From Heptranchias perlo (taxonomy: Eukaryota): 64,000 bases of DNA. Positions 4,716 to 64,000 of this stretch are shown here, piece by piece; the stretch's first letter is position 1, and each line of letters begins with the position of its first letter. The DNA is taken from NCBI RefSeq assembly GCF_035084215.1, contig NW_027139272.1:372001-436000 (forward strand), given 5' to 3'. The position numbers and the translations under genes were made by a program. The notes below the pieces were generated by a model that had not been told where the DNA came from, ran no database searches, and saw nothing but the letters and a program-made list of their open reading frames with translations.

Positions 4716-4795
4716 GTAAGTCCTACTTACGTCACCTTTAAACACTGCGGCCCTTTAACAACCTGCAGCTTAAATGATCTCTCTCACCATCTTAG

Positions 4796-11028: not shown

Positions 11029-11126
11029 AAAATGTACAATCCAAATAATACGGTATATTTATTAAAATGTACAATCTAAAGGGTACGGTATATTTATTAA
11101 AATGTTTCTGATTCTCTGTCCTGCAG

Positions 11127-11149
11127 GAACTGAAAAGATTGAGAGAAAG
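11127..11149 (+). CDS. TRIM exon 4 (23-bp micro-exon)
   Basis: tcctgcag|GAACTGAAAAGATTGAGAGAAAG|gtgagt (ELKRLRER). The 23-bp size is characteristic of this TRIM class and keeps the frame. Confidence 0.85.
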
Positions 11150-11241
11150 GTGAGTACCCAATCCAAACCCAGACTCGGTCTTACACTGTGATCACAGATT
11201 GTATCCAGCAGTGAGTGAGTGAATCAATCCCATTCAAACAG

Positions 11242-11627
11242 GTGCCTGGACAAAGGGGAGGGAGGAGAAGGTGCAGAGAGAGGGGAAGATCAAGAGAGAT
11301 CGTCAGAGGAAGGTGAAGATCAAGAGAGATCGTCAGAGGAAGGTGAAGATCAAGAGAGATCGTCAGAGGAAGGTGAAGATCAAGAGAGATCGTCAGAGGA
11401 AGGTGGAGATCAAGAGAGATCGTCAGAGGAAGGTGAAGATCAAGAGAGATCGTCAGAGGAACGTGAAGATCAAGAGAGATCGTCAGAGGAAGATGAAGAT
11501 CAAGAGAGATCGTCAGAGGAAGATGAAGATCAAGAGATACTGGTATCTGGAAGTCTGAAATACGCCGTGTTTCGAGGCCCTTTACTCTACGCAGTGTGGA
11601 AGGAAATGAAACAGATCATCTCTCCAG
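11242..11627 (+). CDS. TRIM exon 5 (linker with an acidic 10-aa repeat)
   Basis: aaacag|GTGCCTG...TCTCCAG|gtatga; CLDKGEGG...(EDQERSSEEG)x8.5...LVSGSLKYAVFRGPLLYAVWKEMKQIISP. Confidence 0.85.
11282..11538 (+). repeat. 30-bp coding minisatellite in TRIM exon 5
   Basis: (ggtgaagatcaagagagatcgtcagaggaa) x8.5. Confidence 0.93.
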
Positions 11628-11854
11628 GTATGAAACGACTCCACAGGTTTGGGTGAACTTTCTGTAGAGTTTCCTGCTCTCTTCTCCCTCTCCTGAATGT
11701 ACTGACTGTTGTTGTGTACCAATCACTGGGGCAGCAGTCTCTGGTACCTCACTCAAGGGGCCGGGCTTTTTGTGTGACCTCAGATTGAGCGATTCAAGTA
11801 GAGACAGAATCAGAACATTTTCTCATTTGAATCCAGACACTCGCACTTTCCAGT

Positions 11855-12179
11855 AGGGTTCACTGGACAGTGATCAGACTGAGACCCCTCTGACCCAGGG
11901 TTCACTGGACAGTGATCAGACTGAGACCCCCCTGACCCAGGGTTCACTGGACAGTGATCGGACTGAGACCCCCCTGACCCAGAGTTCACTGGACAGTGAT
12001 CAGACTGAGACCCCTCTGACCCAGGGTTCACTGGACAGTGATCAGACTGAGACCCCTCTGACCCAGGGTTCACTGAACAGTGATCAGACTGAGACCCCCT
12101 GACCCAGGGTTCACTGGACAGTGATCAGACTGAGACCCCTCTGACCCAGGGTTCACTGGACAGTGATCAGACTGAGACC
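11855..12179. repeat. 42-bp minisatellite in TRIM intron 5
   Basis: (cagggttcactggacagtgatcagactgagacccctctgacc)n. Confidence 0.93.
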
Positions 12180-12406
12180 ACTGGCTGACTGATTTCCTCT
12201 GCCTGGTCTGTAATATCTGTTCACTGAACACACTGGAGTCCAGGAATATATCGAACTGTACACTGTACCCAGTCTGCACCATTTACTGATACAGAAATTA
12301 TAGACTGGGGGCCGAGCCCAGTTTTCCAGATATCAGATATTAACCTGTGTCCGTCCACCTTCCTCTGTCTAAAATATTTAACATGATGTCATTTTTATTT
12401 CCCCAG

Positions 12407-12951
12407 CCCCAGCCTCACTGACCCTGGACCCAAACACAGCTCATCGTAAGCTCATCCTGTCTGAGGACTGGACCAGTGTGAGACTCGATGACAGAAAATT
12501 ACAGCTTCCCGATAACCCGGAGAGATTCGATTTGTGTCCTTGTGTCCTGGGATCACAGGGATTCACATCAGGGAAACATTACTGGGAGGTGGAGGTCGGG
12601 GACAAGACTCAGTGGGATGTGGGTGTGGCCAGAGAGTCAGTCAACAGGAAGGGAATGATATCACTGGGGCCTAAACGTGGATACTGGACTGTGTGGCTGA
12701 GAAATGGGAATGAATATGGAGCTATTGAAAACCCATTGGTCCCACTGACCCTGAGTGTGAAACTCAGGACCATCGGAGTTTACCTGGACTATGAGGGAGG
12801 ACAGGTGTCATTTTACAATGCTGATGATATGTCCAATCTCTACACTTTCACTCACACATTCACTGAGAAACTCTTTCCTTATTTCTATCCGGGATCGCAC
12901 GATAAGGGTAAAAATACTGCTCCTCTCAAACTGCGTCATTTCAAACTGTAG
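12407..12951 (+). CDS. TRIM exon 6: PRY-SPRY (B30.2) domain
   Basis: tttccccag|CCCCAGCC; [17 protein letters not shown]...[25 protein letters not shown]...[17 protein letters not shown]...FTEKLFPYF; stop TAG at 12949-12951. Confidence 0.93.
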
Positions 12952-44637: not shown

Positions 44638-45176
44638 TGCTGGCTCTGATCACTCTCGATCCCAGAACCGGGCAGTCCAGGCTTGTAGTACCTGAGGACC
44701 TGACCATGGTGGACGCCAATGATCTGAGCCAATAACCTAAACAACGTCTGCCAGGGGTATGAGCAGTGCACCTGCGTTCTGAGCAGCCAGGGATTCACCT
44801 CAGGGAATCACTACTGGGAGATGGAGGCGGCCAACAAGACCGACTGGGACTTGGGACTGGCCCAGGAGACGGCTAACAGGAAGGGGCAGATCACGCTGAC
44901 CCTCGATTGGGTAGTGGACCATCTGTCAGAGGTACGAGCACATCGAAGGGGCTCTGACCTCACCCTCCACTGTCCTCAAACTAACAACCAAGCCCAGGAA
45001 GATCAGGGTCTATGAGGGAGGACAGGTGTCCTTTTACAATGCTGATGACATGTTCCATCTCTGCACTTTTTCACTCACACGTTCAAAGACAAACTGTTCC
45101 CTTTCTTTAATCCTTGGTTGAACAAAAGTAGGAGAAACACGGAACCTCTTTTAAACGGCGTCATTTGAAACTGTAA
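44638..45176 (+). pseudogene. Second TRIM pseudogene: frameshifted PRY-SPRY exon
   Basis: ITLDPRTGQSRLVVPEDLT / CTCVLSSQGFTSGNHYWEMEAANKTDWDLGLAQETANRKGQITL / [14 protein letters not shown] / [12 protein letters not shown] / RHLKL*, split across frames by several indels and stops. Confidence 0.88.
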
Positions 45177-46624: not shown

Positions 46625-48309
46625 GTGTCAGCTATGGCTCAGTGGGTAGCACTCTCCTCTCTCAGTCACAAGGTCATGGGATCAAGTCCCACTTCAGAGA
46701 CTTGAGCACAAAATCTAGCCTGACACACCGAGTGCAATGCTGAGGGAGCACTGCACTGTCAGAGGGGCAGTACTGAGGGAGCACTGCGCTGTCAGAGGGG
46801 CAGTACTGAGGGAGTGCTGCAATGTCAGAGGGGCAGTGCTGAGGGAGTGCTGCACTGTCAGAGGGGCAGTACTGAGGGAGTGCTGCAATGTCAGAGGGGC
46901 AGTGCTGAGGGAGTGCTGCACTGTCAGAGGGGCAGTACTGAGGGAGTGCTGCACTGTCAGAGGGGCAGTACTGAGGGAGTGCTGCACAGTCGGAGGGCAG
47001 TACTGAGGGAGTGCTGCACAGTCAGAGGGGCAGTGCTGAGGGAGTGCTGCACAGTCGGAGGGCAGTACTGAGGGAGTGCTGCACAGTCGGAGGGCAGTAC
47101 TGAGGGAGTGCTGCACAGTCGGAGGGCAGTACTGAGGGAGCGCTGCACAGTCAGAGGGGCAGTGCTGAGGGAGTGCTGCACAGTCGGAGGGCAGTACTGA
47201 GAGAGTGCTGCACAGTCGGAGGGGCAGTACTGAGGGAGTGCTGCACAGTCGGAGGGCAGTACTGAGAGAGTGCTGCACTGTCAGAGGGGCAGTACTGAAG
47301 GAGTGCTGCACAGTCGGGTCGGAGGGGCAGTGCTGAGAGAGTGCTGCACTGTCAGAGGGGCAGTACTGAGGGAGCACTGTGCTGTCAGAGGGGCAGTACT
47401 GAGAGAGCACTGCGCTGTCGGAGGTGCAGTACTGAGAGAGTGCTGCACAGTCGGAGCGCAGTACTGAGGGAGCGCTGCACAGTCGGAGGGCAGTACTGAG
47501 GGAGTGCTGCACAGTCGGAGGGCAGTACTGAGGGAGTGCTGCACAGTCGGAGGGCAGTACTGAGGGAGTGCTGCACAGTCGGAGGGCAGTACTGAGGGAG
47601 CGCTGCACAGTCAGAGGGGCAGTGCTGAGGGAGCGCTGCACTGTCGGAGGGTCAGTCCTGAGGGAGCGCTGCACTGTCGGAGGGTCAGTACTGAGGGAGC
47701 GCTGCACTGTCGGAGGGTCAGCACTGAGGGAGCGCTGCACTGTCGGAGGGTCAGTACTGAGGGAGTGCTGTACTATCTGAGGGTCAGTACTGAGGGAGTG
47801 CTGTACTATCTGAGGGACAGTACTGAGGGAGTGCTGCACTGACGGGGTGCCATCTTTCGGATGAGATGTTAAACCGAGGCCCTGTCTAACCTCTCTGGCA
47901 GACGTAAAAGATCCCATAACACTATTTCGACCACCCACTGAGCAATAGCTGACACCGTTGGGTGGTGGTAGACGGGTTCGTGCGAGGGGGATTCACCTGC
48001 TATTCGCAGTGGACGATGTAACCTGATGGCCGAGCCCCTGGAGGTGGTGGGAAGCATGGCGAGGGTTTGTGCTGTATCCTGTTCTCCCTGGTGTCCTGGC
48101 CAATATTTATCCCTCAACCAACATCACTGAAAAACAGATAATCTGCTCATTATCACGTTGCTGTTTGTGGGATCTTGCTGAGTGTAAATCGGCTGCCTGT
48201 TTACTACATGACAACAGTGACTACACTTCAAAAGTACTTCATTGGCTGTAAAGGTTTGGGACGACCTATGGTCGTGAAAGGCGCTATATAAATGCAAGTA
48301 CTTTCTTTC
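46625..48309 (+). mobile_element. tRNA-derived Deu-domain SINE (SacSINE1/AmnSINE-like) with an internal 31/33-bp tandem expansion
   Basis: tRNA head tggctcagtgggtagc...gggatcaagtcccac; Deu core ctttcggatgagatgttaaaccgaggccc; L2-like tail ggcgctatataaatgcaagt. Confidence 0.8.
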
Positions 48310-49056: not shown

Positions 49057-49340
49057 TCTGAAGATGGAGCACAGGTGATATTCTGGGTGGTCCTGGCACG
49101 TACACCAGTTAAGAGTTTGCAACTTCAGGAGAATATGGGAGGAGAATGGAAGAAAATATATCGTTCGTGGAATTAACTCCTGAAAATGGATCTTGTTGGT
49201 CAGCAGGTGAGGAACCTGCTGTTCTCTGCTCGTCTCTGACATTGTCTGTCTCTGCTGGACTCTGTCGCTTTCTGCTGGTCTCTGCCAGTCCCTTCTGGTC
49301 TCTGATATTCTCTGCTGGTCACTGCAGAACTCTGCTGGTC

Positions 49341-49618
49341 TTACTGGTCTCTGCCGGTCACTGCAGGACTCTGCCGGTCTCTGCTCATCACGGCAGGACT
49401 CTGCCAGTTTCTACTGGTCTCTGATGGGTTTTGCTGGTCTCTGATGGGCTTTGCTGGTCTCTGATGGGCTCTGCTGGTCTCTGATGGGCTCTGCTGGTCT
49501 CTCCTGTTTTGCCTCTTGCTCCAGAAGCCAATTCCGACGATGATGCCAAGAAGAGTGAGTGAGACGGCTGCTGCTCCAGTCCCAATCCCGACATTCGTGC
49601 CTCCTTCTGTCGCCCTCT
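49341..49618 (-). CDS. MHC class I transmembrane and cytoplasmic exon (absent from the ORF track)
   Basis: ttcaatag|AG AGG GCG in phase 1 reads ERATEGGTNVGIGTGAAAVSLTLLGIIVGIGFWSKRQNRRDQQSPSE...GRDQ*: a hydrophobic TM followed by a basic stop-transfer. The 3' end is uncertain because a possible donor (gtaaga) overlaps the stop. Confidence 0.75.
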
Positions 49619-52600
49619 CTATTGAATTTTAAAATGATGTTGATCAATAATTATTTCCTAATGATTTCATTAGGTGCTTCATTAAGCTGCACACTGGTAC
49701 AGTACATGTCTGATAGGGTAATGAACAATTAAAAATGGATTGAAACATGCCTAACTGGCTCCATTACAAATAATAAGCAGAATACAACTCGTTACCATTT
49801 ATTAATCTCAGAAACAGGGCAGTTCCTGACTCGTTACAGAGTTTAAAGTGCAATTCCTGTACTCTGCAGATTAAATCAACACACGAACCACCTGATATCA
49901 GGGATAGAGGCTGCAGAATTACACACTGTAAAATAACAGTGCAATGCCAAGGAGGGGAAACTATTGGCCATTTCTTTTGACAGATGATGGTTGCAGATTG
50001 CAATGTTTGGCCACAGGGAGTGGTTGAGACAGAGACCATTGTATGTTTTAAGGGAAGGGTGGCTAAACATTCGAAGCTCAGGGAGATACAGAGCAGTGAG
50101 GTTAGTTTGGGATTGATACAGGACTATGGGGAGAGAGTGGGGCAGTGGGATTAGTTTGGGATTGATGCAGGGCGATGGGGAGAGAGTGGGGCAGTGGGAT
50201 TAGTTTGGGATTGATGCAGGGCTATGGGGAGAGAGTAGGGCAGTGGGATTAGTTTGGGATTGATACAGGGCTATGGGGAGATACAGAGCAGTGGGTTTAG
50301 TTTGGGATTGATACAGGGCTATGGGGAGAGAGTGGGACAGTTGGATTAGTTTGGGATTGATACAGGGCTATGGGGAGAGAGTGGGGCAGTGGGATTAGTT
50401 TGGGATTGATACAGGGCTATGGGGAGGGCGAGGGGCAGTGGGATTAGTTTGGGATTGATACAGGGCTATGGGGAGGGCGCGGGGCAGTGGGATTAGTTTG
50501 GGATTGATACAGGGCTATGGGGAGAGAGTGGGGCAGTGGGGTTAGTTTGGATTGAGACAGGGCTATGGGGAGGGCGTGGGGCAGTGGGATTAGTTTGGGA
50601 TTGATACAGGGCTCTGGGGAGAGAGTGGGGCAGTGGGGTTAGTTTGGATTGTGACAGGGCGATGGGGAGAGAGTGGGACGGGGGATTAGTTTGGGATTGA
50701 TACAGGGCTATGGAGGGAGAGTGGGGCAGTGGGATTAGTTTGGGATTGATACAGGGCTATGGGGAGAGAGTGGGGCAGTGGGATTAGTTTGGGATTGATA
50801 CAGGGCTATGGGGAGAGAGTGGGGCAGTGGGATTAGTTTGGGATTGATACAGGGCTATGGGGAGAGAGTGGGGCAGTGGGATTAGTTTGGGATTGATACA
50901 CGGCTATGGGGAGAGAGTGGGGCAGTGGGATTAGTTTGGGATTGATACAGGGCTATGGGGAGAGAGTGGGGCAGTGGGATTAGTTTGGGATTGATACACG
51001 GCTATGGGGAGAGAGTGGGGCAGTGGGGTTAGTTTGGATTGTGACAGGGCTATGGGGAAAGGGCAGTCTCTCCAATTGAAATCCTCCCACTCAGCAGAGG
51101 CCAGGGGTTAAATCTGGGACCCTCTGGTCTGTCCGTCTTTGTTCCAGATTGGGCAGGTCATTTACCAATTGTGCTATTGGGTAAATTGAAGGGGATTTTG
51201 CTCAGTGTAACACCGTGAAAGGTGGGCATGTGCTATTGAAAGAGAAAAGGAAGAGGTGTATTTATATAACACCTTTCATGAGCTCAGGATGTCTCAAAGC
51301 ACTTTACAGCCAATTAAACTATTTTGAAGTGTCGTCACTGTTGTGATGTGGAAAACCCGGCAGCCAATTTGCGCACAGCAAGATCCCATGACCAGCAATG
51401 TGATAATGATCAGATCACTTTTTTTATATTCATGTTTATTGAGGGATAAATATTGGCCAGGACACCGGGGATAACTCTCCTGCTCATCCTCGAAATAATG
51501 TCATGGGATGTTTCACCTCCACCTGAGATGGCAGTTGGGGCCTTGACTTAACATCTCATCCGAAAGATGGCACCTCCCACAGTGCCGCACTCCCTCAGTA
51601 CTGACCCTCCGACAGTGCAGCTCTCCCTCAGTACTGACCCTCCGACAGTGCAGCTCTCCCTCAGTACTGACCCTCCGACAGTATCGCACTCCCTCAGTAC
51701 TGTCCCTCCGACAGTGCAGCGCTCCCTCAGTACTGACCCTCCGACAGTACCGCACTCCCTCAGTCCTGACCCTCAGACAGTGCAGCACTCCCTCAGTACT
51801 GACCCTCCGACAGTGCAGCACTCCCTCAGTACTGACCCTCAGACAGTGCAGCACTCCCTCAGTACTGTCCCTCAGACAGTGCAGCACTCCCTCAGTACTG
51901 ACCCTCCGACAGTACCGCACTCCCTCAGTACTGACCCTCAGACAGTGCAGCTCTCCCTCAGTACTGACCCTCCGACAGTACCGCACTCCCTCAGTACTGA
52001 CCCTCCGACAGTGCCGCTCTCCCTCAGTACTGACCCTCCGACAGTGCCGCTCTCCCTCAGTACTGACCCTCCGACAGTGCCGCTCTCCCTCAGTACTGAC
52101 CCTCCGACAGTGCCGCTCTCCCTCAGTACTGACCCTCCGACAGTGCCGCTCTCCCTCAGTACTGACCCTCCGACAGTGCCGCTCTCCCTCAGTACTGACC
52201 CTCCGACAGTGCAGCTCTCCCTCAGTACTGCCCCTTTGACAGTGCCGCTCTGCCTCAGTACTGACCCTCCGACAGTGCAGCTCTCCCTCAGTACTGACCC
52301 TCCGACAGTGCAGCACTCCCTCAGTACTGACCCTCCGACAGTGCCGCTCTCCCTCAGTACTGACCCTCCGACAGTGCCGCACTCCCTCAGTACTGCCTCT
52401 TTGACAGTGCAGCTCTCCCTCAGTACTGACCCTCCGACAGTGCCACACTCCCTCAGTACTGCCCCTTTGACAGTGCAGCGCTCCCCCGAAGGATGCAGAG
52501 ACACGGGGAAGGACCCTGCGGCACAGGGAATGACCTTGAGGCACAGGGAATGACCTCGAGTCACAGGGAATGATCTAGAGTCACAGGGGAGGATCCAGAG

Positions 52601-55600
52601 AAGTGGGGAAGGACGCAGAGACACAAGGAAGGACCCTGAGGCACGGCAATGACCCAGAGGCACAGGGAAGGATGCAGAGGCACAGGGAATGACCCTGAGA
52701 CACAGGGAAGGACCCAGAGGCACGAGGAAGGACCCAGAGGCACGAGGAAGGACCCAGAGGCACGAGGAAGGACCCAGAGGCACAGGGAAGGATGCAGAGG
52801 TACGAGGAAGGACCCAGAGGCACAGGGAAGGATGCAGAGGAACGGGGAATGATCCAGAGGCACGGGGAAGGACCCTGAGACACGGGGAATGATGCAGAGG
52901 CACAGGGAATGACCGAGAGGCACGGGGAAGGACCCAGAGGCACGGGGAAGGATCCAGAGGCACGGGGAAGGACCCAGAGGCACGGGGAAGGACCCAGAGG
53001 CACGGGGAAGGACCCAGAGGCACGGGGAGGGACCCAGAGGCACGGGGAATGACCCAGAGGCACGGGGAATGACCCAGAGGCACAGGGAATGACCCAGAGG
53101 CACAGGGAATGACCCAGAGGCACAGGGAAGGATGCAGAGACACAGGGAAGGACGCAGAGGCACGGGGAATGACCCAGAGGCACAGGGAAGGACCCAGAGG
53201 CACAGGGAAGGACCCAGAGGCACAGGGAAGGACCCAGAGGCACAGGGAAGGACCCAGAGGCACAGGGAAGGACGCAGAGGCACGGGGAATGATCCACAGG
53301 CACAGGGAAGGACCCAGAGGCACAGGGAAGGATGCAGAGGCACAGGGAATGATCCAGAGGCACGGGGAAGGACCCAGAGGCACGGGGAAGGACCCAGAGG
53401 CACGGGGAATGATCCAGAGGCACGGGGAATGATCCAGAGGCACGGGGAATGATCCAGAGGCACGGGGAATGACCCAGAGGCACGGGGAATGACCCAGAGG
53501 CACAGGGAATGACCCAGAGGCACAGGGAAGGACCCAGAGGCACGGGGAATGACCCAGAGGCACGGGGAATGACCCAGAGGCACAGGGAATGACCCAGAGG
53601 CACAGGGAATGACCCAGAGGCACAGGGAATGATCCAGAGGCACGGGGAATGACCCAGAGGCACAGGGAATGACCCAGAGGCACAGGGAAGGACCCAGAGG
53701 CATGGGGAAGGACCCTGTGGGCCCCCAAGACACGGGGAAAAGCCCTGCGGCCCTCCCGAGAATCGGGGATGGACCCAGAGTTCCAGGAAGTACCTCGCGG
53801 CCCCCCCGAGACACAGGGAAAGACCCTGAGGACCCCCCCCCGATTTGCCACTCACCCCAGGGTACGTTGATCCCCCGCAGGAGGCTGGCGTGCTCGATAT
53901 GACAGGAGTAGCTCTTCCTGTCGTCTCCACTCAGCTCGATCGTTTTCAGTACCCGATAGGTCATATCCTGGTTGGGCAGCACGTCACTGGATTCAATGTC
54001 AGCGATCTCCTCGCCATTCCCCAACCAAGTCACCTCGATGGCCCAGGGGTAGAACCCCGACACAAGGCAGGAGACCCTTAGCACTCTGTCCCCGTCACTC
54101 CTCTTCCCAATAAACACCTCAGGGGCGACTGAGAGATTTAAACAAAGAGTACAATCGGTGACAAGTTCTCTTCTTTTGCCTTCATTTCTTCCCCGCCCAC
54201 CACCATCAATTTTCTCGGCCTGAAGGCAGATGACTGATGCTGAGAGACAGCTGGAGTTCACCGGAGTTCAGCTGAGGGGTCACCTGATAGAGGTCGTTAA
54301 GATTATGAAAGGGTTTGATAGGATAGACGTAGGGAAGATGGGCGCTAAATAGGGCCGTGTAGCGCCCGTTGTTTCGGCGCTAGACGGCCTCTCCGACATC
54401 CAAGATGGCGTCTCGGATGCGCACGCACGTTTCCTGCATGACGTGCGCCAGACGCCATCTTGGTATAGGAGTTAGTGCAGGCGCAGATAACGAACGCTGG
54501 AATCATGTAAAGTAGGGAGAAAATGGCTTCAATCAGTGTGCAACGCTGATTTAAAGTGATAGACACCATTTCGGGACTTAACGCTCAACTCAACGCACAG
54601 TCTTAACCCCGACCATCTGAACGTGTCTTACAGTTCCTGGAGGACCCCCCACCGGCTCTATTTAAAGGGACCATGCAGGATTTACAGGTTAGTGGCTGGA
54701 TTATTGCTTCTGGCTGCCAAGACATTCAAAACTGTTTTCGGAGGTCTCCTACATTTGAATACTGGGACACGGGGACATCGCCAAACATTTAGAGCCATGA
54801 CGTGCAGGAGTGAAGTTAGGAAATGCTTCTTCACACAAAGGGTGGGAGATGTTTGGAACGCTCTTCTACAGACGGCAGTTGATGCTCGCTCACTTGTGAA
54901 TGTTAAATCTGAGATTGATAGATTTCTGTGAACCAAGGGTATTATGGGATATGGGGCTAAGGTGGGTATATGGAGTTAGGTCACAGGTCCACCATGATCT
55001 CATTGAATGGTGGAACAGGCTCGAGGGGCTGAATGCCACTGTCACTTGCTGCCTCTTGATATGCACCACCTTCTCCTGTGTCTGGGTGATGTTCCTGTCA
55101 TGGTTGAATAGCTGCCAGTGTGTGTGGCCTGTGAGTTGTGGGTGGGCGGCTTGAAACAGTGGTAATGTGTAAGGGTGAGAGGAAGCATCTGATGGGAAGA
55201 GTTGAGTACTGATGGAAAGAGTTTGTTGGTATGTGGGTGATGGGGGTGTCGTGTGTGGAGCAGTTGGTTGGAGACAACACTTGACAGTTGACCTCACTCA
55301 CCTTGACCACTCATGTCAAAGCATTGAACTTCTTCCTGCAATACATCCATGTTCATGATGCTGTGAGCCTGGGATTGACTTCGTCCCCCGCTGCCTCCCA
55401 CTGCCTTTTGGATATCTGTCTGGAGGGCCTCTTGCCCCCCTCCCCCCACCAACTGTGGATATAGGATGTCCCTCCTTCTGTCCACCTCTTGCACCAAGGC
55501 CTCTAGTGCATCAGCAGAGAACCCTGGTGCATGCACTCTCACAGGCCTGGTACCAACTCAGATCGGCAGATTGGTGAGGTCTGGTGTGCAGATTGGAGGA

Positions 55601-58600
55601 TGTGGGATTTAGTAGTGTGCAACCTTTATTCAATGTTTTAACATAACTCATCAGTGTGTATGTAAACATAGGGATGGGACCTGCATCGTGTTTTACGTGT
55701 GTGATGTCTGATCTCCGTTCAGACTCCGTGCAGACTGTTATTTTCAGCAAATAACAGGTACCAGCTACCTTTAAGAGATTTCTGACAAACATCCTCCCTT
55801 TAAGAGATTGCCCTCCCTCTGGTGGTGGAAAGTGTGAATTGCATTGATTCCAGGTGCAAGGCCTGGGATGGAACGCTGATCGCAGGTCGGTCCTCGGGTG
55901 GGTCGAAACTTGCATCCTGCCTGCGCCGGGACCATTGGACACGGGGTAAAGCACATCACGCTGCCCCCGCCCAAAAACGGCCACATCCAAATTTTTCCCC
56001 CGATGTTTCCACTTGTGGCAGAGGCCAGAACGAGGGGCCATAAATATAAGAGAGTCACTAATAAATCCAATGGGGAATTCAGGAGAAACTCAGAGAGTGG
56101 TTTGAATGTGGAGCTCGCTCTCACAAGGAGTAGTTGAGGCGAATAGAACAGATGCCTTTAAGGGGAAGCTGGATAAACACATGAGGGAGAAAGGAATAGA
56201 AGGATATGCTGATCGGGGGAGATGAAGTAGGGAGGGTGCAGCAATAACACTGGCATAGACCTGTTGGGCCGAATGGCCTGTTTCTGTGTTGTAAATTCCA
56301 TGTAACGGGTCACGTTCCGGTAACGCACACAAGCACCCAGTGTTCACGAGTGAGCCTTCACAGTGAGGACCAGGACGCTATTCAACCATGGGGGTATTAC
56401 AATTTAGTTGAACCCCGTGCTCACCCGATGTCAACACGCACGGGCTTTCCAGCCGGGGAGACTGAGTAGGTCATTGGATTTAGGTCACCTGCCCGCTTAT
56501 CTCCCCCATCCCCACCCCACCCACCCCAAGGGGTACTGAGGCCAGGTGCAGCACCCCTCACTGCTACCCTGTCCGGGAACAGCTGGCTCAGGACAGACTG
56601 GGAATATAAACTTTGCCTGTACGGCACCTCCAGTTCCTGCTCGCTCGAGGTACCTTTCCTCTGTAGTGCTTCTCGCCCAGCCCGAAGGTATATCAGCAGC
56701 CACTTCACACAGTCCTTTTCCAACAGGGTCTTGAAGTATTTGTTCATGAAGGTGTTTGCATTCCACCGGTCTGCTAAAGTCTGGAACTCTGGATTCACCG
56801 CAATCCAACTCAATCTGTCCTTGTCAAAAACATACGCGTCCTCCCCGTCATATCCAAACTTTATAAACCCCTCCGTGGAGTTGTCGCTGTTCAGTTCGCA
56901 GCCACACATTCCCTGGACAAAGAAAACACCTGGAGAAACAACTCAAGTCAATTGAAAATGTGAAAAGGGTTCGATCGGGTACATACAACAACAACAACTT
57001 GCATTTATATAGCGCCTTTCACGGAGTAAAACATCACAAGGCACTTGACAAACAAAATTTGACACCGAGCCACATAAGGAGATATTAGGACAGGTGACCA
57101 AAAGCTTGGACAAAGAGGTAGGTTTGAAGGAGCATCTTAAAGGAGGAGAGAGAGGCGGAGAGGTTTAGGGAGGGAATTCCAGAGGGACTATTTCCTCAGG
57201 TGGGGGAATCAAGATCTTAGATTCAGAGCCAGGCCATTTAGGAGTGAAATCAGGAAGCACTTTATCACACAAAGGGGAGTGGGAATCAGGAACTCTCTCC
57301 CCCAAAAGGCTGTGGGATGCTGGGGGCCCATTGGAGCTTTCAAGACTGAGATTGTTAAATTTTTGTTCGGTAAGGGTATCGATGGATAGGAAGCAAAGGC
57401 TGGAAAATGGAGTTACGGTGCAGATTAGCCATGATATAAATGAATGGTGGAGCAGGCTCGATGGGCTGAATGGCCTCTTCCTCTTTCGATGCTCCTAAGC
57501 AGCTGTGTTACGTTGAGGTTCCATTTATGTCCTGCTGTCTTGGACTTTAACCTTAGCAATAGGTTAGATTGTCACAGAGAGTCATCGATCTCTGGAATTT
57601 CAGTGGGATGAGAACAGATCTGGTCCCGGGTAAATTGGAATCAAAGATTGTCAGGCAAAACTGTAATTGAACAGTGGGCGGCCTTTAAGGAGGAGATGAT
57701 TCGGGTACAGTCTCCACGAGGGAGAAAGGGAGGGCAACTAAAGCCAGAGCTCCCTGGATGACAAAAGAGATAGAGAGTAAGATGAAACAGAAAAAAGGAG
57801 CATATTACAGATGTCAGGTTGATAATACAAGTGAGAACCAGGCAGAATATAGAAAGTTCAGAGGAGAAGTGAAAAAGGAAATAAGAGGGGCAAAGAGAGA
57901 GTCTGAGAATAGACTGGCGGCCAACATAAAAGGGAATCCAAAAGTCTTCTGTAGGTATCTAAACAGTAAACAGGTAGTAAGAGGAGGGGTGGGGCCGATT
58001 AGGGACCATAAAGGAGATCTACTCATGGAGGCAGAGGAGATGGCCAAGGTACTAAATGAGTAATTTGCATCTGTTTTTACCAAGGAAGAAGATGCTGCCA
58101 GAGTCTCAGTAAAGGAAGATATAGTTGAGATACTGGATGGGCTAAAAATTGATAAAGAGGAGGTACTTGAAAGGCTGGCTGTATTTAAAGTAGATCAGTC
58201 ACCCAGTCCGGATGGGATGCATCCTAGGTTGCTGAGGGAAGTAAGGGTGGAAATTGCGGAGATACTGGCCATAATCTTCCAAACATCCGTAGATACAGGG
58301 GTGGTGCCAGAGGACTGGAGAATTGCAAAAGTTATATCCTTGTTCAAAAAAAGGTGTAAGGATAAACCCAGCAACTACAGGTCAGTCAGTTTAACCTCGG
58401 TGGTGGGGAAACTTTTAGAAATGATAATCCGGGACAGAATTAACAGTCACTTGGACGAGTGTGAATTGATTAGGGAAAGCCAGCACGGATTTAAAGGCAA
58501 AACATATTTAACTAACCTGATACAGTTTTTTGATGAGGTAACAGAGAGAGTAGATGAGGGCAATGCGGTTGATGTGATGTATATGGACTTCCAAAAGGCG

Positions 58601-61600
58601 TTTGATAAAGTGCCGCATGGTCGGCTTATCATCAAGATTGCGGCCCATGGAATAAAGGGGGCAGTAGGGACAGGAAACAGAGAGTAGTGGTGAACGGTTG
58701 TTTTTCGGACTGGAGGGAGGTGCACAGTAGTGTTCCCCAGGGGTCGGTGCTGGGACCACTGCTTTTCTTGATATATATTAATGACTTCAACTTGGGTGTA
58801 CGGGGCACAATTTCAAAATTTGCAGATGGCACAAAGCTCGGAAAGGTAGTGAACAGTGAGGATAGTGATAGACTTCAAGAGGATATAGACAGGCTGGTGG
58901 AATGGGCAGACACGTGGCAGATGAAATTTAATGCAGAAAAACGCGAAGTGATACATTTCGATAGGAAGAACGAGGAGAGGCAATATAAACTAGAGGGCAC
59001 AATTCTAAAAGGGTACAGGAACAGAGAGATCTGGGGGTATATGTGCACAAATCATTCAAGGGAGCAGGGCAGGCTCAGAAAGCGGTTAAAAAAACATCCT
59101 GGATCCTGGGCTTTTTAAATAGAGGCATAGAGTACAAAAGTATGGAAGTCATGATGAACCTTTATAAAACACTGGTTCGGCCACAACGGGAGTATGGTGT
59201 CCAGTTCTGGGCACCGCACTTTAGGAAGGATGTGAAGGCCTTGGAGAGGGTGCAGAATAGATTTACCAGAATGATTCCAGGGATGAGGGACTTTAGTTAT
59301 GTGGATGGACTGGAGAAGCTGGGGTTGTTCTCCTTGGAACAGAGACGGTTGCGAGGAGATTTGATCGAAGTGTTTAAAATCATGAAGAAACTATTCCCAT
59401 TGACAGAAGGGTTAAAAACCAGAGGTCATAGATTTAAGGTGATTGGCAAAAGAAGCAAAGGTGACTTGAGGAAAAACTTTTTTACACAGCGAGTGGTTAG
59501 GATCTGGAATGCACGGCCCGAGGGGATGGTGGAGGCAGATTCAATCGTGGACTTCAAAAGGGAACTGGATAAGTAATGAAAGGAAAAAATTTGGAGGGCT
59601 ACAGGGATAGGGCAGGGGAGTGGGACTAGCTGGATTGCTCTTGCATAGAACCAGCACGGACTCAATGGGCCGAATGGCCTCCTTCCGTGCTGTCACCTTT
59701 CTGTGATTCGATGAACAAGTTGCCTGCATGCACAGTGTGTGTGTGTGGACTGCAAGTGTTGGAAAGGGGACTGGCGACCAATAGAAAGTATCTCGAGTTA
59801 TAGGAGGTGTGTGGGGTTAATGGGGACCAGTGATATCAGACACTGTGGTCTCCTGCACCTTCCTCGATTCCCTGGGGGGGGGGGTCGCAGAGGAATCTCC
59901 CAGAGTGTTTGCTTTCCTAACTTGGCCTCAGTTTCATCCTCTTTCTTTGGCCTCTCCCAGGAGATTGTGTGACTGTGGGAGGGAGAGGGTGCTGATGGTG
60001 TGTGTGTGTGTGTTGTTTCACCGTGCCAAGACAGGACAGGCTTGATGGACCCGCCTGTCCTGATTTCATCTGTTTGTTAGTAACCCTGGCAACGCAGCTT
60101 TAGAAGAGGAGAAACAAGTGGCAGCGATGATTTCATTCCAACGTTCAAGGTGCTCACATCAAATCCCTCAGTGCTGCCCCTCCCTCAGTGCTGCACTCCC
60201 TCAGTGCTGCCCCTCCCACAGTGCTGCCCCTCCCACAGTGCTGCCCCTCCCACAGTGCTGCCCCTCCCTCAGTGCTGCCCCTCCCACAGTGCTGCCCCTC
60301 CCACAGTGCTGCCCCTCCCACAGTGCTGCCCCTCCCACAGTGCTGCCCCTCCCTCAGTGCTCCCCCTCCCTCAGTGCTGCCCCTCCCACAGTGCTGCCCC
60401 TCCCTCAGTGCTGCCCCTCCCTCAGTGCTGCACTGGGAGTGCCAGCCGAGATTTTGTGCTCCAGTCTCTGGAGTGGGACTTGAACCCACAACCTTCTGAA
60501 CTGGAGGTGAGAGTAAGAAGGTCGTGGTTTCAGGCCCCACTCCAGAGATTTGAGCGCATTATCCGGGCTGACACTCCAGTGCAGTACTGAGGGAGCGCTG
60601 CACTGTCGGAGGGGCAGTACTGAGGGAGCGCTGCACTGTCGGAGGGGCAGTACTGAGGGAGTGCTGCACTGTCGGAGGGGCAGTACTGAGGGAGTGATGC
60701 ATTGTCGGAGGGGCAGTACTGAGGGAGTGATGCATTGTCGGAGAGGCAGTACTGAGGGAGTGATGCACTGTCGGAGGGGCAGTACTGAGGGAGTGATGCA
60801 TTGTCGGAGGGGCAGTACTGAGGGAGTGATGCATTGTCGGAGAGGCAGTACTGAGGGAGTGATGCACTGTCAGAGGGGCAGTACTGAGGGAGTGATGCAT
60901 TGTCGGAGGGGCAGTACTGAGGGAGTGATGCATTGTCGGAGGGGCAGTACTGAGGGAGTGATGCATTGTCGGAGAGGCAGTACTGAGGGAGTGATGCACT
61001 GTCAGAGGGGCAGTACTGAGGGAGTGATGCATTGTCGGAGGGGCAGTACTGAGGGAGTGATGCATTGTCGGAGGGGCAGTACTGAGGGAGCGCTGCACTG
61101 TCGGAGGGGCAGTACTGAGGGAGTGCTGCACTGTCGGAGGGGCAGTACTGAGGGAGTGCTGCACTGTCGGAGGAGCAGTACTGAGGGAGTGATGCATTGT
61201 CGGAGAGGCAGTACTGAAGGAGTGATGCATTGTCGGAGAGGCAGTACTGAGGGAGTGCTGCACTGTCGGAGGGGCAGTACTGAGGGAGCGCTGCACTGTC
61301 GGAGGGGCAGTACTGAGGGAGTGCTGCACTGTCGGCGGGGCAGTACTGAGGGAGTGATGCATTGTCGGAGAGGCAGTACTGAGGGAGTGATGCATTGTCG
61401 GAGAGGCAGTACTGAGGGAGTGATGCATTGTCGGAGAGGCAGTACTGAGGGAGTGCTGCACTGTCGGCGGGGCAGTAGTGAGGGAGCGCTGCACTGTCGG
61501 AGAGGCAGTACTGAGGGAGTGCTGCACTGTCGGAGAGGCAGTACTGAGGGAGTGCTGCATTGTCGGAGGGGCAGTACTGAGGGAGTGATGCATTGTCGGA

Positions 61601-63043
61601 GGGGCAGTACTGAGGGAGTGATGCATTGTCGGAGAGGCAGTACTGAGGGAGTGATGCATTGTCGGAGGGGCAGTACTGAGGGAGTGATGCATTGTCGGAG
61701 AGGCAGTACTGAGGGAGCGCTGCACTGTCGGAGGGGCAGTACTGAGGGAGTGATGCATTGTCGGAGGGGCAGTACTGAGGGAGTGATGCATTGTCGGAGA
61801 GGCAGTACTGAGGGAGTGATGCACTGTCGGAGGGGCAGTACTGAGGGAGTGCTGCACTGTCGGAGGAGCAGTACTGAGGGAGTGATGCATTGTCGGAGAG
61901 GCAGTACTGAAGGAGTGATGCATTGTCGGAGAGGCAGTACTGAGGGAGTGCTGCACTGTCGGAGGGGCAGTACTGAGGGAGCGCTGCACTGTCGGAGGGG
62001 CAGTACTGAGGGAGTGCTGCACTGTCGGCGGGGCAGTACTGAGGGAGTGATGCATTGTCGGAGAGGCAGTACTGAGGGAGTGATGCATTGTCGGAGAGGC
62101 AGTACTGAGGGAGTGATGCATTGTCGGAGAGGCAGTACTGAGGGAGTGCTGCACTGTCGGCGGGGCAGTAGTGAGGGAGCGCTGCACTGTCGGAGAGGCA
62201 GTACTGAGGGAGTGCTGCACTGTCGGAGAGGCAGTACTGAGGGAGTGCTGCATTGTCGGAGGGGCAGTACTGAGGGAGTGATGCATTGTCGGAGGGGCAG
62301 TACTGAGGGAGTGATGCATTGTCGGAGAGGCAGTACTGAGGGAGTGATGCACTGTCGGAGGGGCAGTACTGAGGGAGTGATGCATTGTCGGAGGGGCAGT
62401 ACTGAGGGAGTGATGCATTGTCGGAGGGGCAGTACTGAGGGAGTGCTGCACTGTCGGAGATGCCGTCCTTCAGATGAGACGTTAAATCGAGGCCCCGTCT
62501 TCCTGTTCAAATGAACATAAAAAGAACCAATTGCTCCCATTTCTCCCTCAATCCACACCAATAAAAACAGATGAACAAATCAATCATCTCATTGCCATTT
62601 GCTGTGCAGAAAATGTCTGCCATGTTACTCCCAGATAGTGCCAATGACCAGGTCATCCCAAGTCATTTAATGGGTGTAAAGTGGTTCGGGACATTTCTCC
62701 GAGACAGGATAAGGCTCTATATGGATACAAATCCTTTCCTCCTGTCAGTCGATAGCTGCACCGGCTCTGTGAGGATACTCACTCGAGGCACCGTGTTGCT
62801 GTCGGTAAAATATCTCGGCGTTTCCTCTGACCAGACCATGGAACCCCGCCATTGTGATGGCGATGGCGTCCCAGTGATGGTTGTCGAAGGAGTCGGCCAT
62901 CCACTGCTGTCTGGGCACAGTCCGCTGCAGGGTGCTGTCGAAATACACTATCTCATAGTCATCGAGCATCGCGACCAAGCTGTACTCGGGCATCTCGGCC
63001 CCGCCACGGCTCAGTATGTAGTAAAATGCGAGGATGTGGAAAT
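49341..63043 (-). CDS. Nonclassical MHC class I heavy chain gene (alpha1, alpha2, alpha3, TM/cytoplasmic; leader exon probably beyond the window end)
   Basis: Four phase-1 exons of 261, 276, 273 and 278 bp splice in frame with no internal stop. Class I motifs present: H3, D29, FDS, PRxxW, Q96, C101-C164, YDGxD, W133, W147, Y171, and an Ig C1 domain. Confidence 0.9.
50085..51066. repeat. 49-bp G-rich minisatellite derived from a CR1 3' UTR
   Basis: (gggattagtttgggattgatacagggctatggggagagagtggggcagt)n. It follows a CR1 ORF2-end remnant (~50015-50085) and resembles the CR1 3' UTR at 10913-10958. Confidence 0.88.
51241..52486 (-). mobile_element. SacSINE1-like SINE, head missing, with a 33-bp tandem expansion (51575-52485)
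   Basis: Reverse complement of the Deu core and tail; repeat (cagtactgaccctccgacagtgcagcactccct)n. Confidence 0.8.
52488..53716. repeat. 20-bp purine-rich minisatellite in the MHC alpha3-TM intron
   Basis: (gacccagaggcacrgggaak)n, about 60 copies. Confidence 0.95.
53856..54128 (-). CDS. MHC class I alpha3 exon (Ig C1-set)
   Basis: tctctcag|TCGCCCCT...CCCTGGG|gtgagt; VAPEVFI...VSCLVSGFYPWAIEVTW...VLPNQDMTYRV...YSCHIEHASL...VPW. Confidence 0.93.
54270..55035 (+). mobile_element. CR1 3' fragment split by a ~400-bp GC-rich non-autonomous element (~54340-54750)
   Basis: LRGHLIEVVKIMKGFDRID ... TRGH...FFTQRVGDVWNAL plus the CR1 tail. Confidence 0.65.
55045..56001 (-). mobile_element. Degraded PIF/Harbinger DNA transposon carrying a Myb/SANT-like pseudo-exon (55302-55542)
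   Basis: APGFSADALEALVQEVDRRRDILYP / KRPSRQISKRQWEAAGDEVN...*TWMYCRKKFNALT*VVK|gtgagt; terminus GGGGAAAAATTTGG. Confidence 0.7.
56003..56305 (+). mobile_element. CR1 LINE 3' end
   Basis: MFPLVAEARTRGHKYK...; tail gggccgaatggcctgtttctgtgttg. Confidence 0.75.
56654..56929 (-). CDS. MHC class I alpha2 exon (276 bp)
   Basis: ttctccag|GTGTTTTC...AGGAAAG|gtacct; SVFFVQGMCGCELNSDNSTEGFIKFGYDGEDAYVFDKDRLSWIAV...ADRWN...LEKDCVKWLLIYLRAGREALQRK. Confidence 0.93.
56986..57185 (-). mobile_element. L2 LINE 3' end
   Basis: acaacaacaacttgcatttatatagcgcc..., same family as 18040-18508. Confidence 0.75.
57595..59712 (+). mobile_element. CR1 (HER1-like) LINE, 5'-truncated, same subfamily as 8325-11028
   Basis: MHPRLLREVRVEIAE, VPQGSVLGPLLFLIYIND, SKFADG; tail gggccgaatggcctccttccgtgctgtcacc. 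Confidence 0.92.
60164..60500 (-). mobile_element. SacSINE1-like 5' part with a 20-bp tandem expansion
   Basis: Minus strand agaaggttgtgggttcaagtcccactccagagac...gtgcagcactgaggga; on +, (cagtgctgcccctcccY..)n. Confidence 0.7.
60515..62742 (+). mobile_element. SacSINE1-like SINE with a ~1.9-kb 33-bp tandem expansion (60580-62460)
   Basis: cccactccagagatttgagc...gctgacactccagtgcag, then (cagtactgagggagtgatgcattgtcggagggg)n, then tgccgtccttcagatgagacgttaaatcgaggcccc. Confidence 0.82.
62783..63043 (-). CDS. MHC class I alpha1 exon
   Basis: cctgcag|ATTTCCAC...GCCTCGA|gtgagt; DFHILAFYYILSRGGAEMPEYSLVAMLDDYEIVYFDSTLQRTVPRQQWMADSFDNHHWDAIAITMAGFHGLVRGNAEIFYRQQHGAS. Confidence 0.92.
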
Positions 63044-63131: not shown

Positions 63132-63947
63132 GACCATAAGACCATAAGAGATAGCAGCAGGAGTAGGCCATTCAGCCCCTCGAGCCTGCTCCGCCATTCA
63201 ATGAGATCATGGCTGATCTGATTTTTACCTCAACTCCACTTTCACGCCCTTTCCCCATATCGTTTGACTCCCTTGCTGATCAAAAATTTGTCTAACTCAG
63301 CCTTGAATGTATTCAATGACTCCACAGCTTTTTGGGATAAAGAATTCCAAAGATTCACAACCCTCTGGGAGAAGAAATTCCTCCTCATTTCCGTCTTAAA
63401 CGGGCGACCCCTTATTCTGAGACTATGCCCCCTAGTTTTAGATTCCCCCATGAGGGGTAACGTCCTCTCAGCATCTACCCTATCGAGTCCCCTCAGAATC
63501 TTGTATTTTTCATAAGATCTCCTCTCATTCTTCAAAACTCCAATGAGTATAGACCCAACCTGTTCAATCTTTCCTCATAAGACAACCCTTCCATGCCCGG
63601 AATCAACCTCGTGAACCTTCTCTGAACTGCCTCCAATGCAAGTATGTCCTTCCTTAAATAAGGTCACCAGAACTGTACGCAGTGCTCCAGGTGTGGTCTC
63701 ACCAGCACCCTGTACAGTTGTAGCATGACTTCCCTGCTTTTATACTCCATCCCCCTGGAAATAAAGGCCAATACTCCGTTTGCCTTCCGGATTACCTGCT
63801 GCACCTGTATGTTGACTTTTTGTGTTTCATGTAGGAGGACACCCAGATCCCTCTGTACCGCAGCATTTTGTAGTATTTCTCCATTCAAATAATATTTTGC
63901 TTTTTTATTTTTCCTCCCAAAGTGGATGACTTCACATTTTCCCATAT
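63132..63947 (-). mobile_element. CR1 LINE 3' portion
   Basis: KCEVIHFGRKN...RDLGVL...RPHLEHCVQFW...FFSQRVVNLWNSL; tail (tcttatgg)n. Confidence 0.9.
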
Positions 63948-64000
63948 TAGGCCACAGTGAGGACGTTGCGTCCGATTTTGGATACCATGTGTTGAAGAGG

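What the first reader, a model, noticed from the sequence alone, without database searches (positions are those of the whole stretch)
49341..63043. Nonclassical MHC class I with a hydrophobic groove lacking peptide anchors: candidate lipid or small-molecule presenter
Seen: four exons splice in frame without stops. By manual alignment to HLA-A2 numbering the peptide-terminus anchors read Y7F, Y59H, R/Y84Q, Y123A, T143L, K146R and Y159L; only W147 and Y171 remain. Groove-facing positions are mostly hydrophobic (L5, F7, L24, I63, M67, F70, L73, V74, F81, I114, F116, L143, M152, F156, L159). The beta2m-contact and structural residues H3, D29, Q96, G120, D122 and C101-C164 are kept. Established: hydrophobic grooves lacking these anchors characterise CD1, ZAG and other non-peptide-binding class I molecules. 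Inference: a beta2m-associated molecule presenting non-peptide ligands. It may belong to a described elasmobranch nonclassical lineage (UBA, UCA, UDA, UEA, UFA) or a new one; I cannot assign the lineage by eye.
Basis: partly seen in the sequence, partly recalled or inferred. Interest (0 to 1): 0.8.

Follow-up and report, generated by a model that had tools for sequence, protein, structure and literature searches.

The report
Shark lipid-type MHC class I gene
This is a real, already annotated nonclassical MHC class I gene of the sevengill shark, from an old shark-and-ray lineage that is sister to the recently solved UGA molecule; its groove is very greasy and has lost the peptide anchors, so a lipid-like ligand is likely but untested.

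Summary
Four minus-strand exons (alpha1, alpha2, alpha3, TM/tail) join in frame with canonical splice sites. Spliced RNA contigs confirm both ends of the alpha2 and alpha3 exons. The window is Heptranchias perlo and this copy equals RefSeq XP_067834405.1 ('MR1-like'). That model has no leader exon and none lies in the window. Its tail is frameshifted by a 40-bp microsatellite expansion relative to seven sister copies. Only near-identical copies are shown to be expressed.

The gene belongs to a lineage found in sharks and rays, usually one gene per species. This lineage is sister to UGA (PDB 9ch4; support 99/93), distinct from UFA (PDB 8gm8), and not classical. Six of eight peptide-terminus anchors are lost. 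Of 35 pocket positions, 69-72% are aliphatic or Phe/Trp/Cys, and they are almost invariant between sharks and rays. The MR1 Schiff-base lysine is absent.

The best reading is a beta2m-associated binder of hydrophobic, lipid-type ligands, as reported for UFA and UGA. That is inferred, not shown. I could not test whether the lineage is the published UDA, UEA or UCA. Other first-stage notes in this genome describe similar genes on other pieces.

The parts
62783..63043 (-). alpha1 exon (phase 1 at both ends). It encodes (D)FHILAFYY...QQHGAS(S).
   Evidence: Sequence read. Pfam MHC_I 27 bits. Identical to RefSeq P0161 and P0254 alpha1. Best PDB match is the UGA structure 9ch4, E 1.9e-22. The donor at 62782 (GTGAGT) is the one used by the RefSeq models (the 'GASS|VFF' join).
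56654..56929 (-). alpha2 exon, with C101 and C164 (HLA numbering) and an extra Cys at position 99
   Evidence: Pfam MHC_I 67 bits. Both exon ends coincide with the ends of a spliced RNA contig piece, 56654-56929. 48% identical, without gaps, to human MR1 alpha2.
53856..54128 (-). alpha3 exon (Ig C1-set domain)
   Evidence: Pfam C1-set 61 bits. An RNA contig piece covers 53856-54128, and the joint 54128->56654 appears in 3 runs.
49341..49618 (-). Connecting peptide, transmembrane segment and cytoplasmic tail exon, ending in TAA (49343-49341)
   Evidence: 91/91 identical to the C-terminus of RefSeq P0255. The AlphaFold model of sister copy P0161 has a TM helix at residues 302-328.
49248..49506 (.). 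Degenerate 10-bp-period microsatellite that encodes most of the cytoplasmic tail. This copy has four 20-bp units where the proteins of seven sister copies imply two, which shifts the frame and lengthens the tail.
   Evidence: Tandem Repeats Finder row. Tails compared.
56930..62782 (-). Intron between alpha1 and alpha2 (5.9 kb), filled with a LINE reverse-transcriptase fragment and 17-bp and 33-bp tandem arrays
   Evidence: ORFs. RVT_1 hit at 58064-58684. Arrays at 60164-60431 and 60581-62459.
54129..56653 (-). Intron between alpha2 and alpha3 (2525 bp), removed in RNA
   Evidence: Joint 'skips 2525, CT..AC' in runs X1, X2 and X3.

Best explanation
Identity. [quoted passage not shown] It belongs to a distinct class I lineage present in both sharks and rays, here called lineage A. 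Lineage A is the sister of the UGA lineage and its neighbour in the MHC class Ib cluster.

Proposed mechanism. The heavy chain has the ordinary class I build: alpha1/alpha2 platform, C1-set alpha3, TM segment and short tail. It most likely pairs with beta2-microglobulin. Its groove has lost the residues that clamp peptide ends and is lined almost wholly by invariant aliphatic and aromatic side chains. A few invariant polar residues sit near the rim (H59, T66, N77, Q84, R146, D163). The likely function is therefore to hold a hydrophobic, lipid-type ligand and display it at the cell surface to lymphocyte receptors, in the manner of CD1 and of shark UFA and UGA.

Shown: the gene structure, splicing and expression of the gene family, lineage placement, anchor loss, groove composition and conservation.

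Inferred: beta2m pairing, ligand class, and recognition by T or NK cells.

Open: whether this particular copy is functional. No leader exon is seen, the tail is frameshifted, and its own allele is not seen in RNA.
For: Gene model.
- Exons and splice sites.
- Pfam domains.
- Identity to RefSeq P0255 and P0161.
- Spliced contigs with the exact exon ends.

Lineage.
- One to two proteins per species in 12 shark and ray species, at 54-72% identity to the skate query P0001. The next class I hits are about 34% identical.
- Careful IQ-TREE: lineage A 100/100, UGA 100/100, A+UGA 99/93, with a ray/shark split inside A.
- 9ch4, titled 'shark nonclassical MHC class I, UGA', is the best sequence match (241 bits) and the best structural match (Z 27.1; title).

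Linkage.
- Lineage A and UGA proteins of H. perlo lie on the same 529,794-bp scaffold.
- The two Leucoraja proteins have adjacent accession numbers.
- In Pristis the 'MR1-like' gene sits directly before three 'F10-like' class Ib genes, between B2M/BRD2 and COL11A2/RXRB.

Groove.
- 69-72% of 35 pocket positions are A, V, I, L, M, F, W or C in lineage A. The figure is 51-60% in UGA and 46% in classical-type P0175. Only 3 charged residues are present, and most columns are invariant.
- alpha1 and alpha2 have more invariant columns (43/88 and 48/91) than alpha3 (28/91).

Function of relatives. UFA and UGA are reported as CD1-like lipid binders by crystal structure and mass spectrometry (PMC12562908; PMC10751288).
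Against: - There is no ligand, beta2m-pairing or surface-expression data for this lineage.
- Composition alone cannot show an open cavity, and I could not read model coordinates to measure one.
- By sequence the protein is nearer to MR1 and to classical class I than to CD1, which is not among the best 60 PDB sequence matches.
- No tyrosine-based endosomal sorting motif is visible in the tail.
- This copy lacks an annotated leader: P0255 starts at an internal Met.
- None of the contigs shown to cover site 56757 (X1 and X2) carries the window's T.
Confidence: 0.6

Rival explanations
1. This particular copy is a recent, 5'-truncated or otherwise disabled duplicate. Full-length sister copies in the same genome carry out the lineage's function.
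For: - RefSeq has at least 10 models in the same 90% cluster, on at least 7 scaffolds.
- Five of them start with the leader MLLVTLLNVYCVPNVSS. The window's model (P0255) and three others start at the internal Met of alpha1.
- No leader is found in the 957 bp upstream within the window.
- The tail is frameshifted by +40 bp relative to seven copies.
- The RNA contigs covering alpha2 carry C at 56757 where the window has T.
Against: - All four exons are intact and the ectodomain is 100% identical to full-length copies.
- All splice sites are canonical.
- The leader may simply lie beyond the window, behind a LINE insertion (63245-63999).
- Contigs drop minor variants, so absence of the window allele proves nothing.
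- The scaffolds may be haplotigs rather than paralogues.
Confidence: 0.35
2. It presents lipopeptides or very hydrophobic peptides rather than free lipids, as chicken YF1*7.1 does with N-acylated amino acids and peptides.
For: - Chicken YF1*7.1 entries rank directly below UGA in the structural re-alignment (Z 25.2-25.6). This is within 1 Z of many other class I chains.
- W147, Y171 and R146 are kept at the F-pocket end, and Y9, Y155 and N77 are invariant.
Against: - Z values are tied with classical chicken, duck, fish and MR1 chains, so the fold gives no specific pointer.
- Six of eight terminus anchors are gone.
Confidence: 0.15
3. The groove is closed or ligand-free, and the molecule acts as a ligand for a receptor or has a non-immune role, as with HFE, FcRn, MIC or ZAG.
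For: - Many class I-like molecules without peptide anchors carry no ligand (established knowledge).
- ZAG is among the structural matches (Z 24.5).
Against: - Groove-lining positions are the most conserved part of the protein and stay hydrophobic over the shark-ray divergence. That is hard to explain for an unused, buried surface.
- Small residues at floor positions 97 (Gly) and 123 (Ala) leave room rather than filling it.
- Sister UGA is reported to hold lipids.
Confidence: 0.1
4. It is a shark counterpart of MR1 that captures small metabolites.
For: - NCBI names the lineage 'MR1-like'.
- The alpha2 exon is 48% identical to human MR1 without gaps (79 bits). That is higher than to UGA (66 bits).
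- His aligns with MR1 His58.
Against: - MR1 Lys43, the Schiff-base residue (modified or mutated in the MR1 entries aligned), aligns with Thr. That column is T/I/C/A across the lineage.
- MR1 Arg94 aligns with Gly, Trp156 with Leu, Tyr62 with Ile/Met and Trp69 with Phe.
- alpha1 scores only 27-28 bits against MR1, versus 83 against UGA.
Confidence: 0.04

Closest known systems
Shark nonclassical MHC class I UGA (PDB 9ch4, released 2026-03-18; probably nurse shark)
   Same: - It is the sister lineage (99/93 support) and a genomic neighbour.
- Identity is 41-49% in every domain.
- Shared motifs in the helices are AGFHG(L/I) in alpha1 and MN.YFK.LLEKDC in alpha2.
- Both lose Y159, and both have G97 and a small or aliphatic residue at 123 (mostly Ala).
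- It is the best structural match, Z 27.1.
   Different: - The two are separate clades, each with both sharks and rays, so the split predates the shark-ray divergence.
- Lineage A has an even more hydrophobic pocket set: 69-72% against 51-60%.
- Position by position: H59 in A and Y59 in UGA, Cys99 and Phe99, R146 and K146.
- Lineage A lacks the N86 glycosylation sequon and has a conserved NST in alpha2 instead.
Shark nonclassical MHC class I UFA (PDB 8gm8, released 2024-11-27)
   Same: It is another MHC-linked elasmobranch class Ib lineage, described as CD1-like (PMC10751288, PMC12562908).
   Different: - The relationship is distant. The window's alpha1 scores 43 bits against 8gm8, versus 83 against UGA.
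- The UFA-type protein P0027 has a very divergent alpha2 and is not grouped with lineage A or UGA (polytomy).
CD1 (tetrapods)
   Same: The proposed working principle is the same: a beta2m-associated class I fold with a hydrophobic groove lacking peptide anchors.
   Different: - There is no specific sequence relationship. CD1 appears only through alpha3 matches and is not among the best 60 whole-protein PDB matches.
- This gene is MHC-linked.
- No YXXphi sorting motif is present in the tail.
MR1 (mammals)
   Same: - It is the best non-shark sequence match (about 181 bits).
- The alignment over alpha2 is gap-free.
- His is shared at the position of MR1 His58.
   Different: Lys43, Arg94, Trp156, Tyr62 and Trp69 of the MR1 ligand pocket are not conserved.
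Chicken YF1*7.1
   Same: It is a nonclassical class I with a hydrophobic groove that binds lipids and N-acylated ligands, and it ranks high among structural matches (Z 25.6).
   Different: Identity is 27%, and the Z value is tied with many peptide-binding class I molecules.

Membership tests
MHC class I heavy chain | alpha1/alpha2 MHC_I domain followed by a C1-set Ig domain and a TM segment | tested here: met
   Pfam MHC_I on the alpha1 and alpha2 exons and C1-set on the alpha3 exon. TM helix in the model of the sister copy.
MHC class I heavy chain | Conserved alpha2 disulfide (C101-C164) and alpha3 Ig disulfide | tested here: met
   Both Cys pairs are present in the exon translations and aligned.
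Classical class I (UAA) | Invariant peptide-terminus anchors Y7, Y59, Y/R84, T143, K146, W147, Y159, Y171 | tested here: not met
   Only W147 and Y171 remain. Compared with classical-type P0175, which has all eight.
Classical class I (UAA) | Polymorphism concentrated in the groove | tested here: not met
   Ten H. perlo copies or alleles are identical at all pocket positions. The groove is the most conserved part across species.
UGA lineage | Falls inside the clade that holds PDB 9ch4-type sequences | tested here: not met
   It forms a separate clade with 100/100 support and is sister to UGA. Identity to 9ch4 is 41%.
UFA lineage | Close similarity to PDB 8gm8-type sequences | tested here: not met
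   The alpha1 exon scores 43 bits against 8gm8, and only over residues 2-59. The UFA-type P0027 scores 305 bits against 8gm8 and lies elsewhere in the tree.
UBA, UCA, UDA, UEA lineages | Clustering with the published reference sequences | not testable with these tools
   The defining papers are not held. No database protein carries these names.
CD1 | Specific sequence relationship of alpha1/alpha2 to CD1 | tested here: not met
   CD1 chains match only through alpha3 and are absent from the best 60 whole-protein matches and the top 50 structural rows.
CD1 | Hydrophobic ligand cavity | tested here: inconclusive
   The composition is strongly hydrophobic. Cavity volume could not be measured because model coordinates are not readable.
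CD1 | Tyrosine-based endosomal sorting motif in the tail (most isoforms) | tested here: not met
   No Tyr in the tail of this copy or of its sister copies.
MR1 | Lys43, which forms a Schiff base with the ligand | tested here: not met
   It aligns with Thr. The column is T/I/C/A across the lineage (HLA position 45).
MR1 | Aromatic and basic pocket residues (Tyr62, Trp69, Arg94, Trp156) | tested here: not met
   They align with Ile, Phe, Gly and Leu respectively.

The most novel reading that the evidence does not exclude
Lineage A would be a so far unnamed third lipid-type class I lineage of elasmobranchs. It would have been born with UGA by a tandem duplication before sharks and rays parted, and later expanded to several copies in the sevengill shark. 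Its invariant, apparently unpaired cysteine on the groove floor (HLA position 99, next to the C101-C164 disulfide) would take part in holding the ligand, for example by covalent or redox-dependent capture. That would be a cysteine analogue of the lysine trick of MR1.
Probability: 0.2. Interest if true: 0.65.

Novelty: new member of a known kind. Interest (0 to 1): 0.4.

Why it matters
Lipid presentation by class I-like molecules was long thought to begin with CD1 in tetrapods. Shark UFA and UGA have moved that origin back to the earliest jawed vertebrates. A third lineage would strengthen that picture: it is deeply conserved, is the sister of UGA, and has an even more hydrophobic and more invariant groove. 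It would show that cartilaginous fish keep a small family of such presenters side by side in the MHC. It would also offer a clean comparison pair (UGA against its sister) for asking which groove residues set ligand choice. The practical value is a defined target for expression, lipid elution and tetramer work in sharks.

Tried and rejected
- PDB codes in the paper library. Searches for 9CH4 and 8GM8 gave only chance hits or nothing.
- The lineage-defining papers. Almeida 2020 and 2021 (PMC7002201, PMC8454915) are not held. Other papers that cite them give no UDA or UEA sequence features.
- The supplement of PMC10751288 labels genes only 'MHC-Ib'.
- Lineage names in protein databases. Three cluster look-ups and a search seeded with P0018 returned only automatic RefSeq names.
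- A possible UDA structure. Testing P0283 against the PDB found no close structure.
- P0172 as a guess for the 9ch4 lineage was wrong, at 175 bits only.
- Earlier scan findings by sequence and by lineage words were blank.
- Model coordinates are not exposed, so no cavity volume was computed.
- The joined four-exon protein was never typed or searched. Exons were searched one by one, and whole-protein work used RefSeq proteins returned by the tools (P0161, P0255).
Full report
**What is in the sequence**

The finding lies on the minus strand. Reading the four stretches gives these exons:
- alpha1: 63043..62783
- alpha2: 56929..56654
- alpha3: 54128..53856
- a last exon, 49618..49341, that encodes the connecting peptide, a transmembrane segment and the cytoplasmic tail, ending in TAA at 49343-49341.

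Every acceptor is AG and every donor GT. All junctions are phase 1, as in class I genes generally, and no exon has a stop.

Each exon was scanned on its own against Pfam:
- MHC_I on alpha2: 67 bits.
- MHC_I on alpha1: 27 bits, just below the whole-protein cut-off when taken alone.
- C1-set on alpha3: 61 bits.

All whole-protein work used RefSeq proteins returned by the tools.

**Which genome, and which gene**

A search of 1.84 billion representatives with the alpha1 exon found one close cluster. A word search seeded with its skate representative found the family. [quoted passage not shown]

The cluster holds eleven H. perlo proteins on at least seven scaffolds. One of them, P0255 (XP_067834405.1, on a 449,286-bp scaffold), is identical to the window over alpha2, alpha3 and all 91 residues of the last exon. 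The window copy is therefore that RefSeq gene.

Two things set it apart from its sisters:
- Its RefSeq model begins at an internal methionine of alpha1 (MPEYSL...). Five sister models begin with a leader, MLLVTLLNVYCVPNVSS. No leader is found in the 957 bp that the window holds upstream of alpha1. That stretch is LINE debris.
- Its tail differs. The tail is encoded in a degenerate 10-bp-period microsatellite. The window has four 20-bp units where the proteins of seven sister copies imply two. The extra 40 bp shift the frame and give a longer, different tail.

**Expression**

One sample with three runs holds the alpha2 exon. Their contigs were laid on 53800-57000. All three runs show the joint 54128->56654. 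It skips 2525 bases and reads CT..AC on the plus strand, which is GT..AG on the gene strand.

One 1438-nt contig covers exactly 53856-54128 and 56654-56929. It has a further 539 nt on the 3' side and 350 nt on the 5' side. The 350 nt are enough for the 261-nt alpha1 exon plus a leader. Unique intron sequence has little or no depth.

Spliced mRNA of this gene family therefore exists, with the predicted exon ends. However, the two alpha2 contigs that cover 56757 (X1, X2) carry C there, where the window has T; the change is synonymous. At 54006 one run shows the window's base and another shows the RefSeq Val allele. Expression of this exact copy is therefore not shown. Contigs drop minor variants, so it is not excluded either.

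**Lineage**

The word search returns one or two proteins per species from sharks (Pristiophorus, Scyliorhinus, Mustelus, Cetorhinus, Stegostoma, Hemiscyllium, Chiloscyllium) and rays (Leucoraja, Pristis, Mobula, Hypanus). They are 54-72% identical to the skate query. The next class I proteins are only about 34% identical.

The best solved structure by sequence is 9ch4 (241 bits), followed by MR1 (about 181) and classical class I (148-174). CD1 is not among the best 60. Foldseek gives the entry titles:
- 9ch4 is 'Crystal structure of shark nonclassical MHC class I, UGA'.
- 8gm8 is 'Crystal structure of shark nonclassical MHC class I, UFA'. This title was obtained by folding the Cetorhinus protein P0027 and searching with the model.

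A second word search recovered the UGA lineage in sharks and rays, including an H. perlo member on the same 529,794-bp scaffold as P0161.

A careful IQ-TREE analysis of 46 elasmobranch class I proteins gives:
- the window's lineage: 100/100 support
- UGA: 100/100
- the two together: 99/93
- a ray/shark split inside each lineage.

A quick tree of 93 proteins agrees, although it warns that two long branches meet at the A+UGA join. The domain-wise scores give independent support: the alpha1 exon scores 83 bits against UGA and at most 43 against anything else.

The gene is therefore neither UFA nor UGA nor classical. It is UGA's sister, and the duplication predates the shark-ray divergence. In Pristis the 'MR1-like' gene sits just before three 'F10-like' class Ib genes, next to TRIM39-like genes and between B2M/BRD2 and COL11A2/RXRB. 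That is the class Ib cluster described by Verissimo et al. 2023 (PMC10751288). The window likewise carries a TRIM gene.

I could not test whether the lineage is what the literature calls UDA, UEA or UCA. The defining papers are not held, and no database protein carries those names.

**The groove**

I aligned the lineage with UGA, with chimaera relatives and with a classical-type shark protein, P0175. P0175 keeps Y7, Y59, R84, T143, K146, W147, Y159 and Y171. The HLA-A2 numbers rest on standard knowledge of that sequence, anchored on invariant motifs and on P0175. HLA-A2 itself was not available as a usable sequence.

At the 35 positions that form pockets A-F in HLA-A2, the share of A, V, I, L, M, F, W or C is:
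- lineage A: 69-72%, with three charged residues
- UGA: 51-60%
- P0175: 46%.

Most of these columns are invariant from sevengill shark to manta ray. Counted over whole domains, alpha1 and alpha2 have more invariant columns (43/88 and 48/91) than alpha3 (28/91). This is the reverse of classical class I and points to selection for one conserved ligand class.

The remaining polar pocket residues (H59, T66, N77, Q84, R146, D163) are invariant and lie on the helices. In CD1 the residues that bind lipid head groups sit in a comparable place; that comparison is inference. Positions 97 (Gly) and 123 (Ala) are small. Position 99 is an invariant cysteine with no evident partner.

**What it is not**

The 'MR1-like' name reflects a real similarity. 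The alpha2 exon is 48% identical to human MR1 without gaps. However, the MR1 lysine that binds ligand covalently aligns with Thr. Arg94, Trp156, Tyr62 and Trp69 align with Gly, Leu, Ile and Phe.

Structure comparison of an AlphaFold model of P0161 (pLDDT 82.9) ranks UGA first (Z 27.1). After that comes a tie of chicken YF1*7.1, classical bird and fish molecules, MR1 and ZAG (Z 24.4-25.6). Beyond UGA, the fold does not discriminate.

**Most likely mechanism**

A beta2m-associated, membrane-anchored class I molecule whose invariant hydrophobic groove holds a lipid-type ligand for display to lymphocyte receptors. This is what a 2025 review reports for UFA and UGA from crystal structures and mass spectrometry (PMC12562908). 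The ligand class, beta2m pairing and recognition are inferred, and I put this at about 0.6.

Rivals:
- a lipopeptide presenter of the YF1 type
- a ligand-free receptor ligand
- an MR1-type metabolite presenter, which is largely excluded.

Separately, this copy may be a disabled duplicate, at about one chance in three.

**Novelty**

The gene is annotated, and its Pristis orthologue is already marked 'MHC-Ib' in a published table. The kind of molecule, a shark class I with a CD1-like groove, is known through UFA and UGA. What may be new is the recognition of this lineage as UGA's older sister with a still more hydrophobic groove, and its multiplication in H. perlo. Other first-stage notes of this scan describe similar genes elsewhere in this genome. 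One of them lies 242 kb before this window on the same piece.

**Limits**

- Model coordinates could not be read.
- Tetrapod reference sequences could not be brought into a tree.

Noticed in passing
window 1035-12948 (+): A TRIM-type gene. RING and B-box lie at 1035-1472, TRIM coiled coil at 4796-5065 and PRY-SPRY at 12382-12948 (Pfam). It lies tail to tail with the class I gene. TRIM39-like genes flank the orthologue in Pristis.
   Followed up: partly
window 21188-42376: A 21-kb satellite of a 37-bp unit, about 570 copies at 90% match. It accounts for the flat GC skew of -0.46 across a third of the window.
   Followed up: no
window 44728-45012 (+): An open frame that resembles the SPRY part of the upstream TRIM gene but has no Pfam hit at E 0.001. 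It is probably a decayed TRIM fragment.
   Followed up: partly
window 46740-47845, 51573-52485, 60581-62459: Three arrays of what looks like the same 33-bp unit, one of them in the opposite orientation. They lie downstream of the gene and in two of its introns.
   Followed up: no
alpha2 exon, window 56904-56902 (codon of Cys at HLA position 99): An extra cysteine two residues before C101. It is invariant in all 11 lineage members and is Phe in all UGA sequences. No conserved partner cysteine is present.
   Followed up: partly
alpha1 exon end and alpha2 exon start (window 62783-62800; 56870-56880): The usual N86 glycosylation sequon (NQT/NET in UGA and classical-type sequences) is absent from the whole lineage. 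A conserved N-S/T-T sequon sits in the first alpha2 loop instead.
   Followed up: no
H. perlo RefSeq proteins P0161 and P0249-P0258: At least ten near-identical models of this gene lie on at least seven scaffolds, up to three per scaffold. Some have a leader and some lack one. These are either a recent tandem expansion in the sevengill shark or uncollapsed haplotigs.
   Followed up: partly
alpha1 versus alpha2 exon scores: The two groove domains point to different relatives. alpha1 scores 83 bits against UGA and 27-28 against MR1. alpha2 scores 79 bits against MR1 and 66 against UGA.
   Followed up: no
proteins P0188, P0197, P0203 (Callorhinchus milii, one 49-kb contig): Three chimaera class I proteins grouped as sister to lineage A plus UGA in the quick tree (support 88). 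They fell into a polytomy in the careful tree, so a holocephalan counterpart is possible but unresolved.
   Followed up: partly
proteins P0018, P0283, P0037, P0285, P0286: This is another conserved shark class Ib lineage, also named 'MR1-like' by NCBI. It keeps most peptide-terminus anchors: Y7, Y59, T143, K146, W147, Y159 and Y171 in P0018.
   Followed up: no
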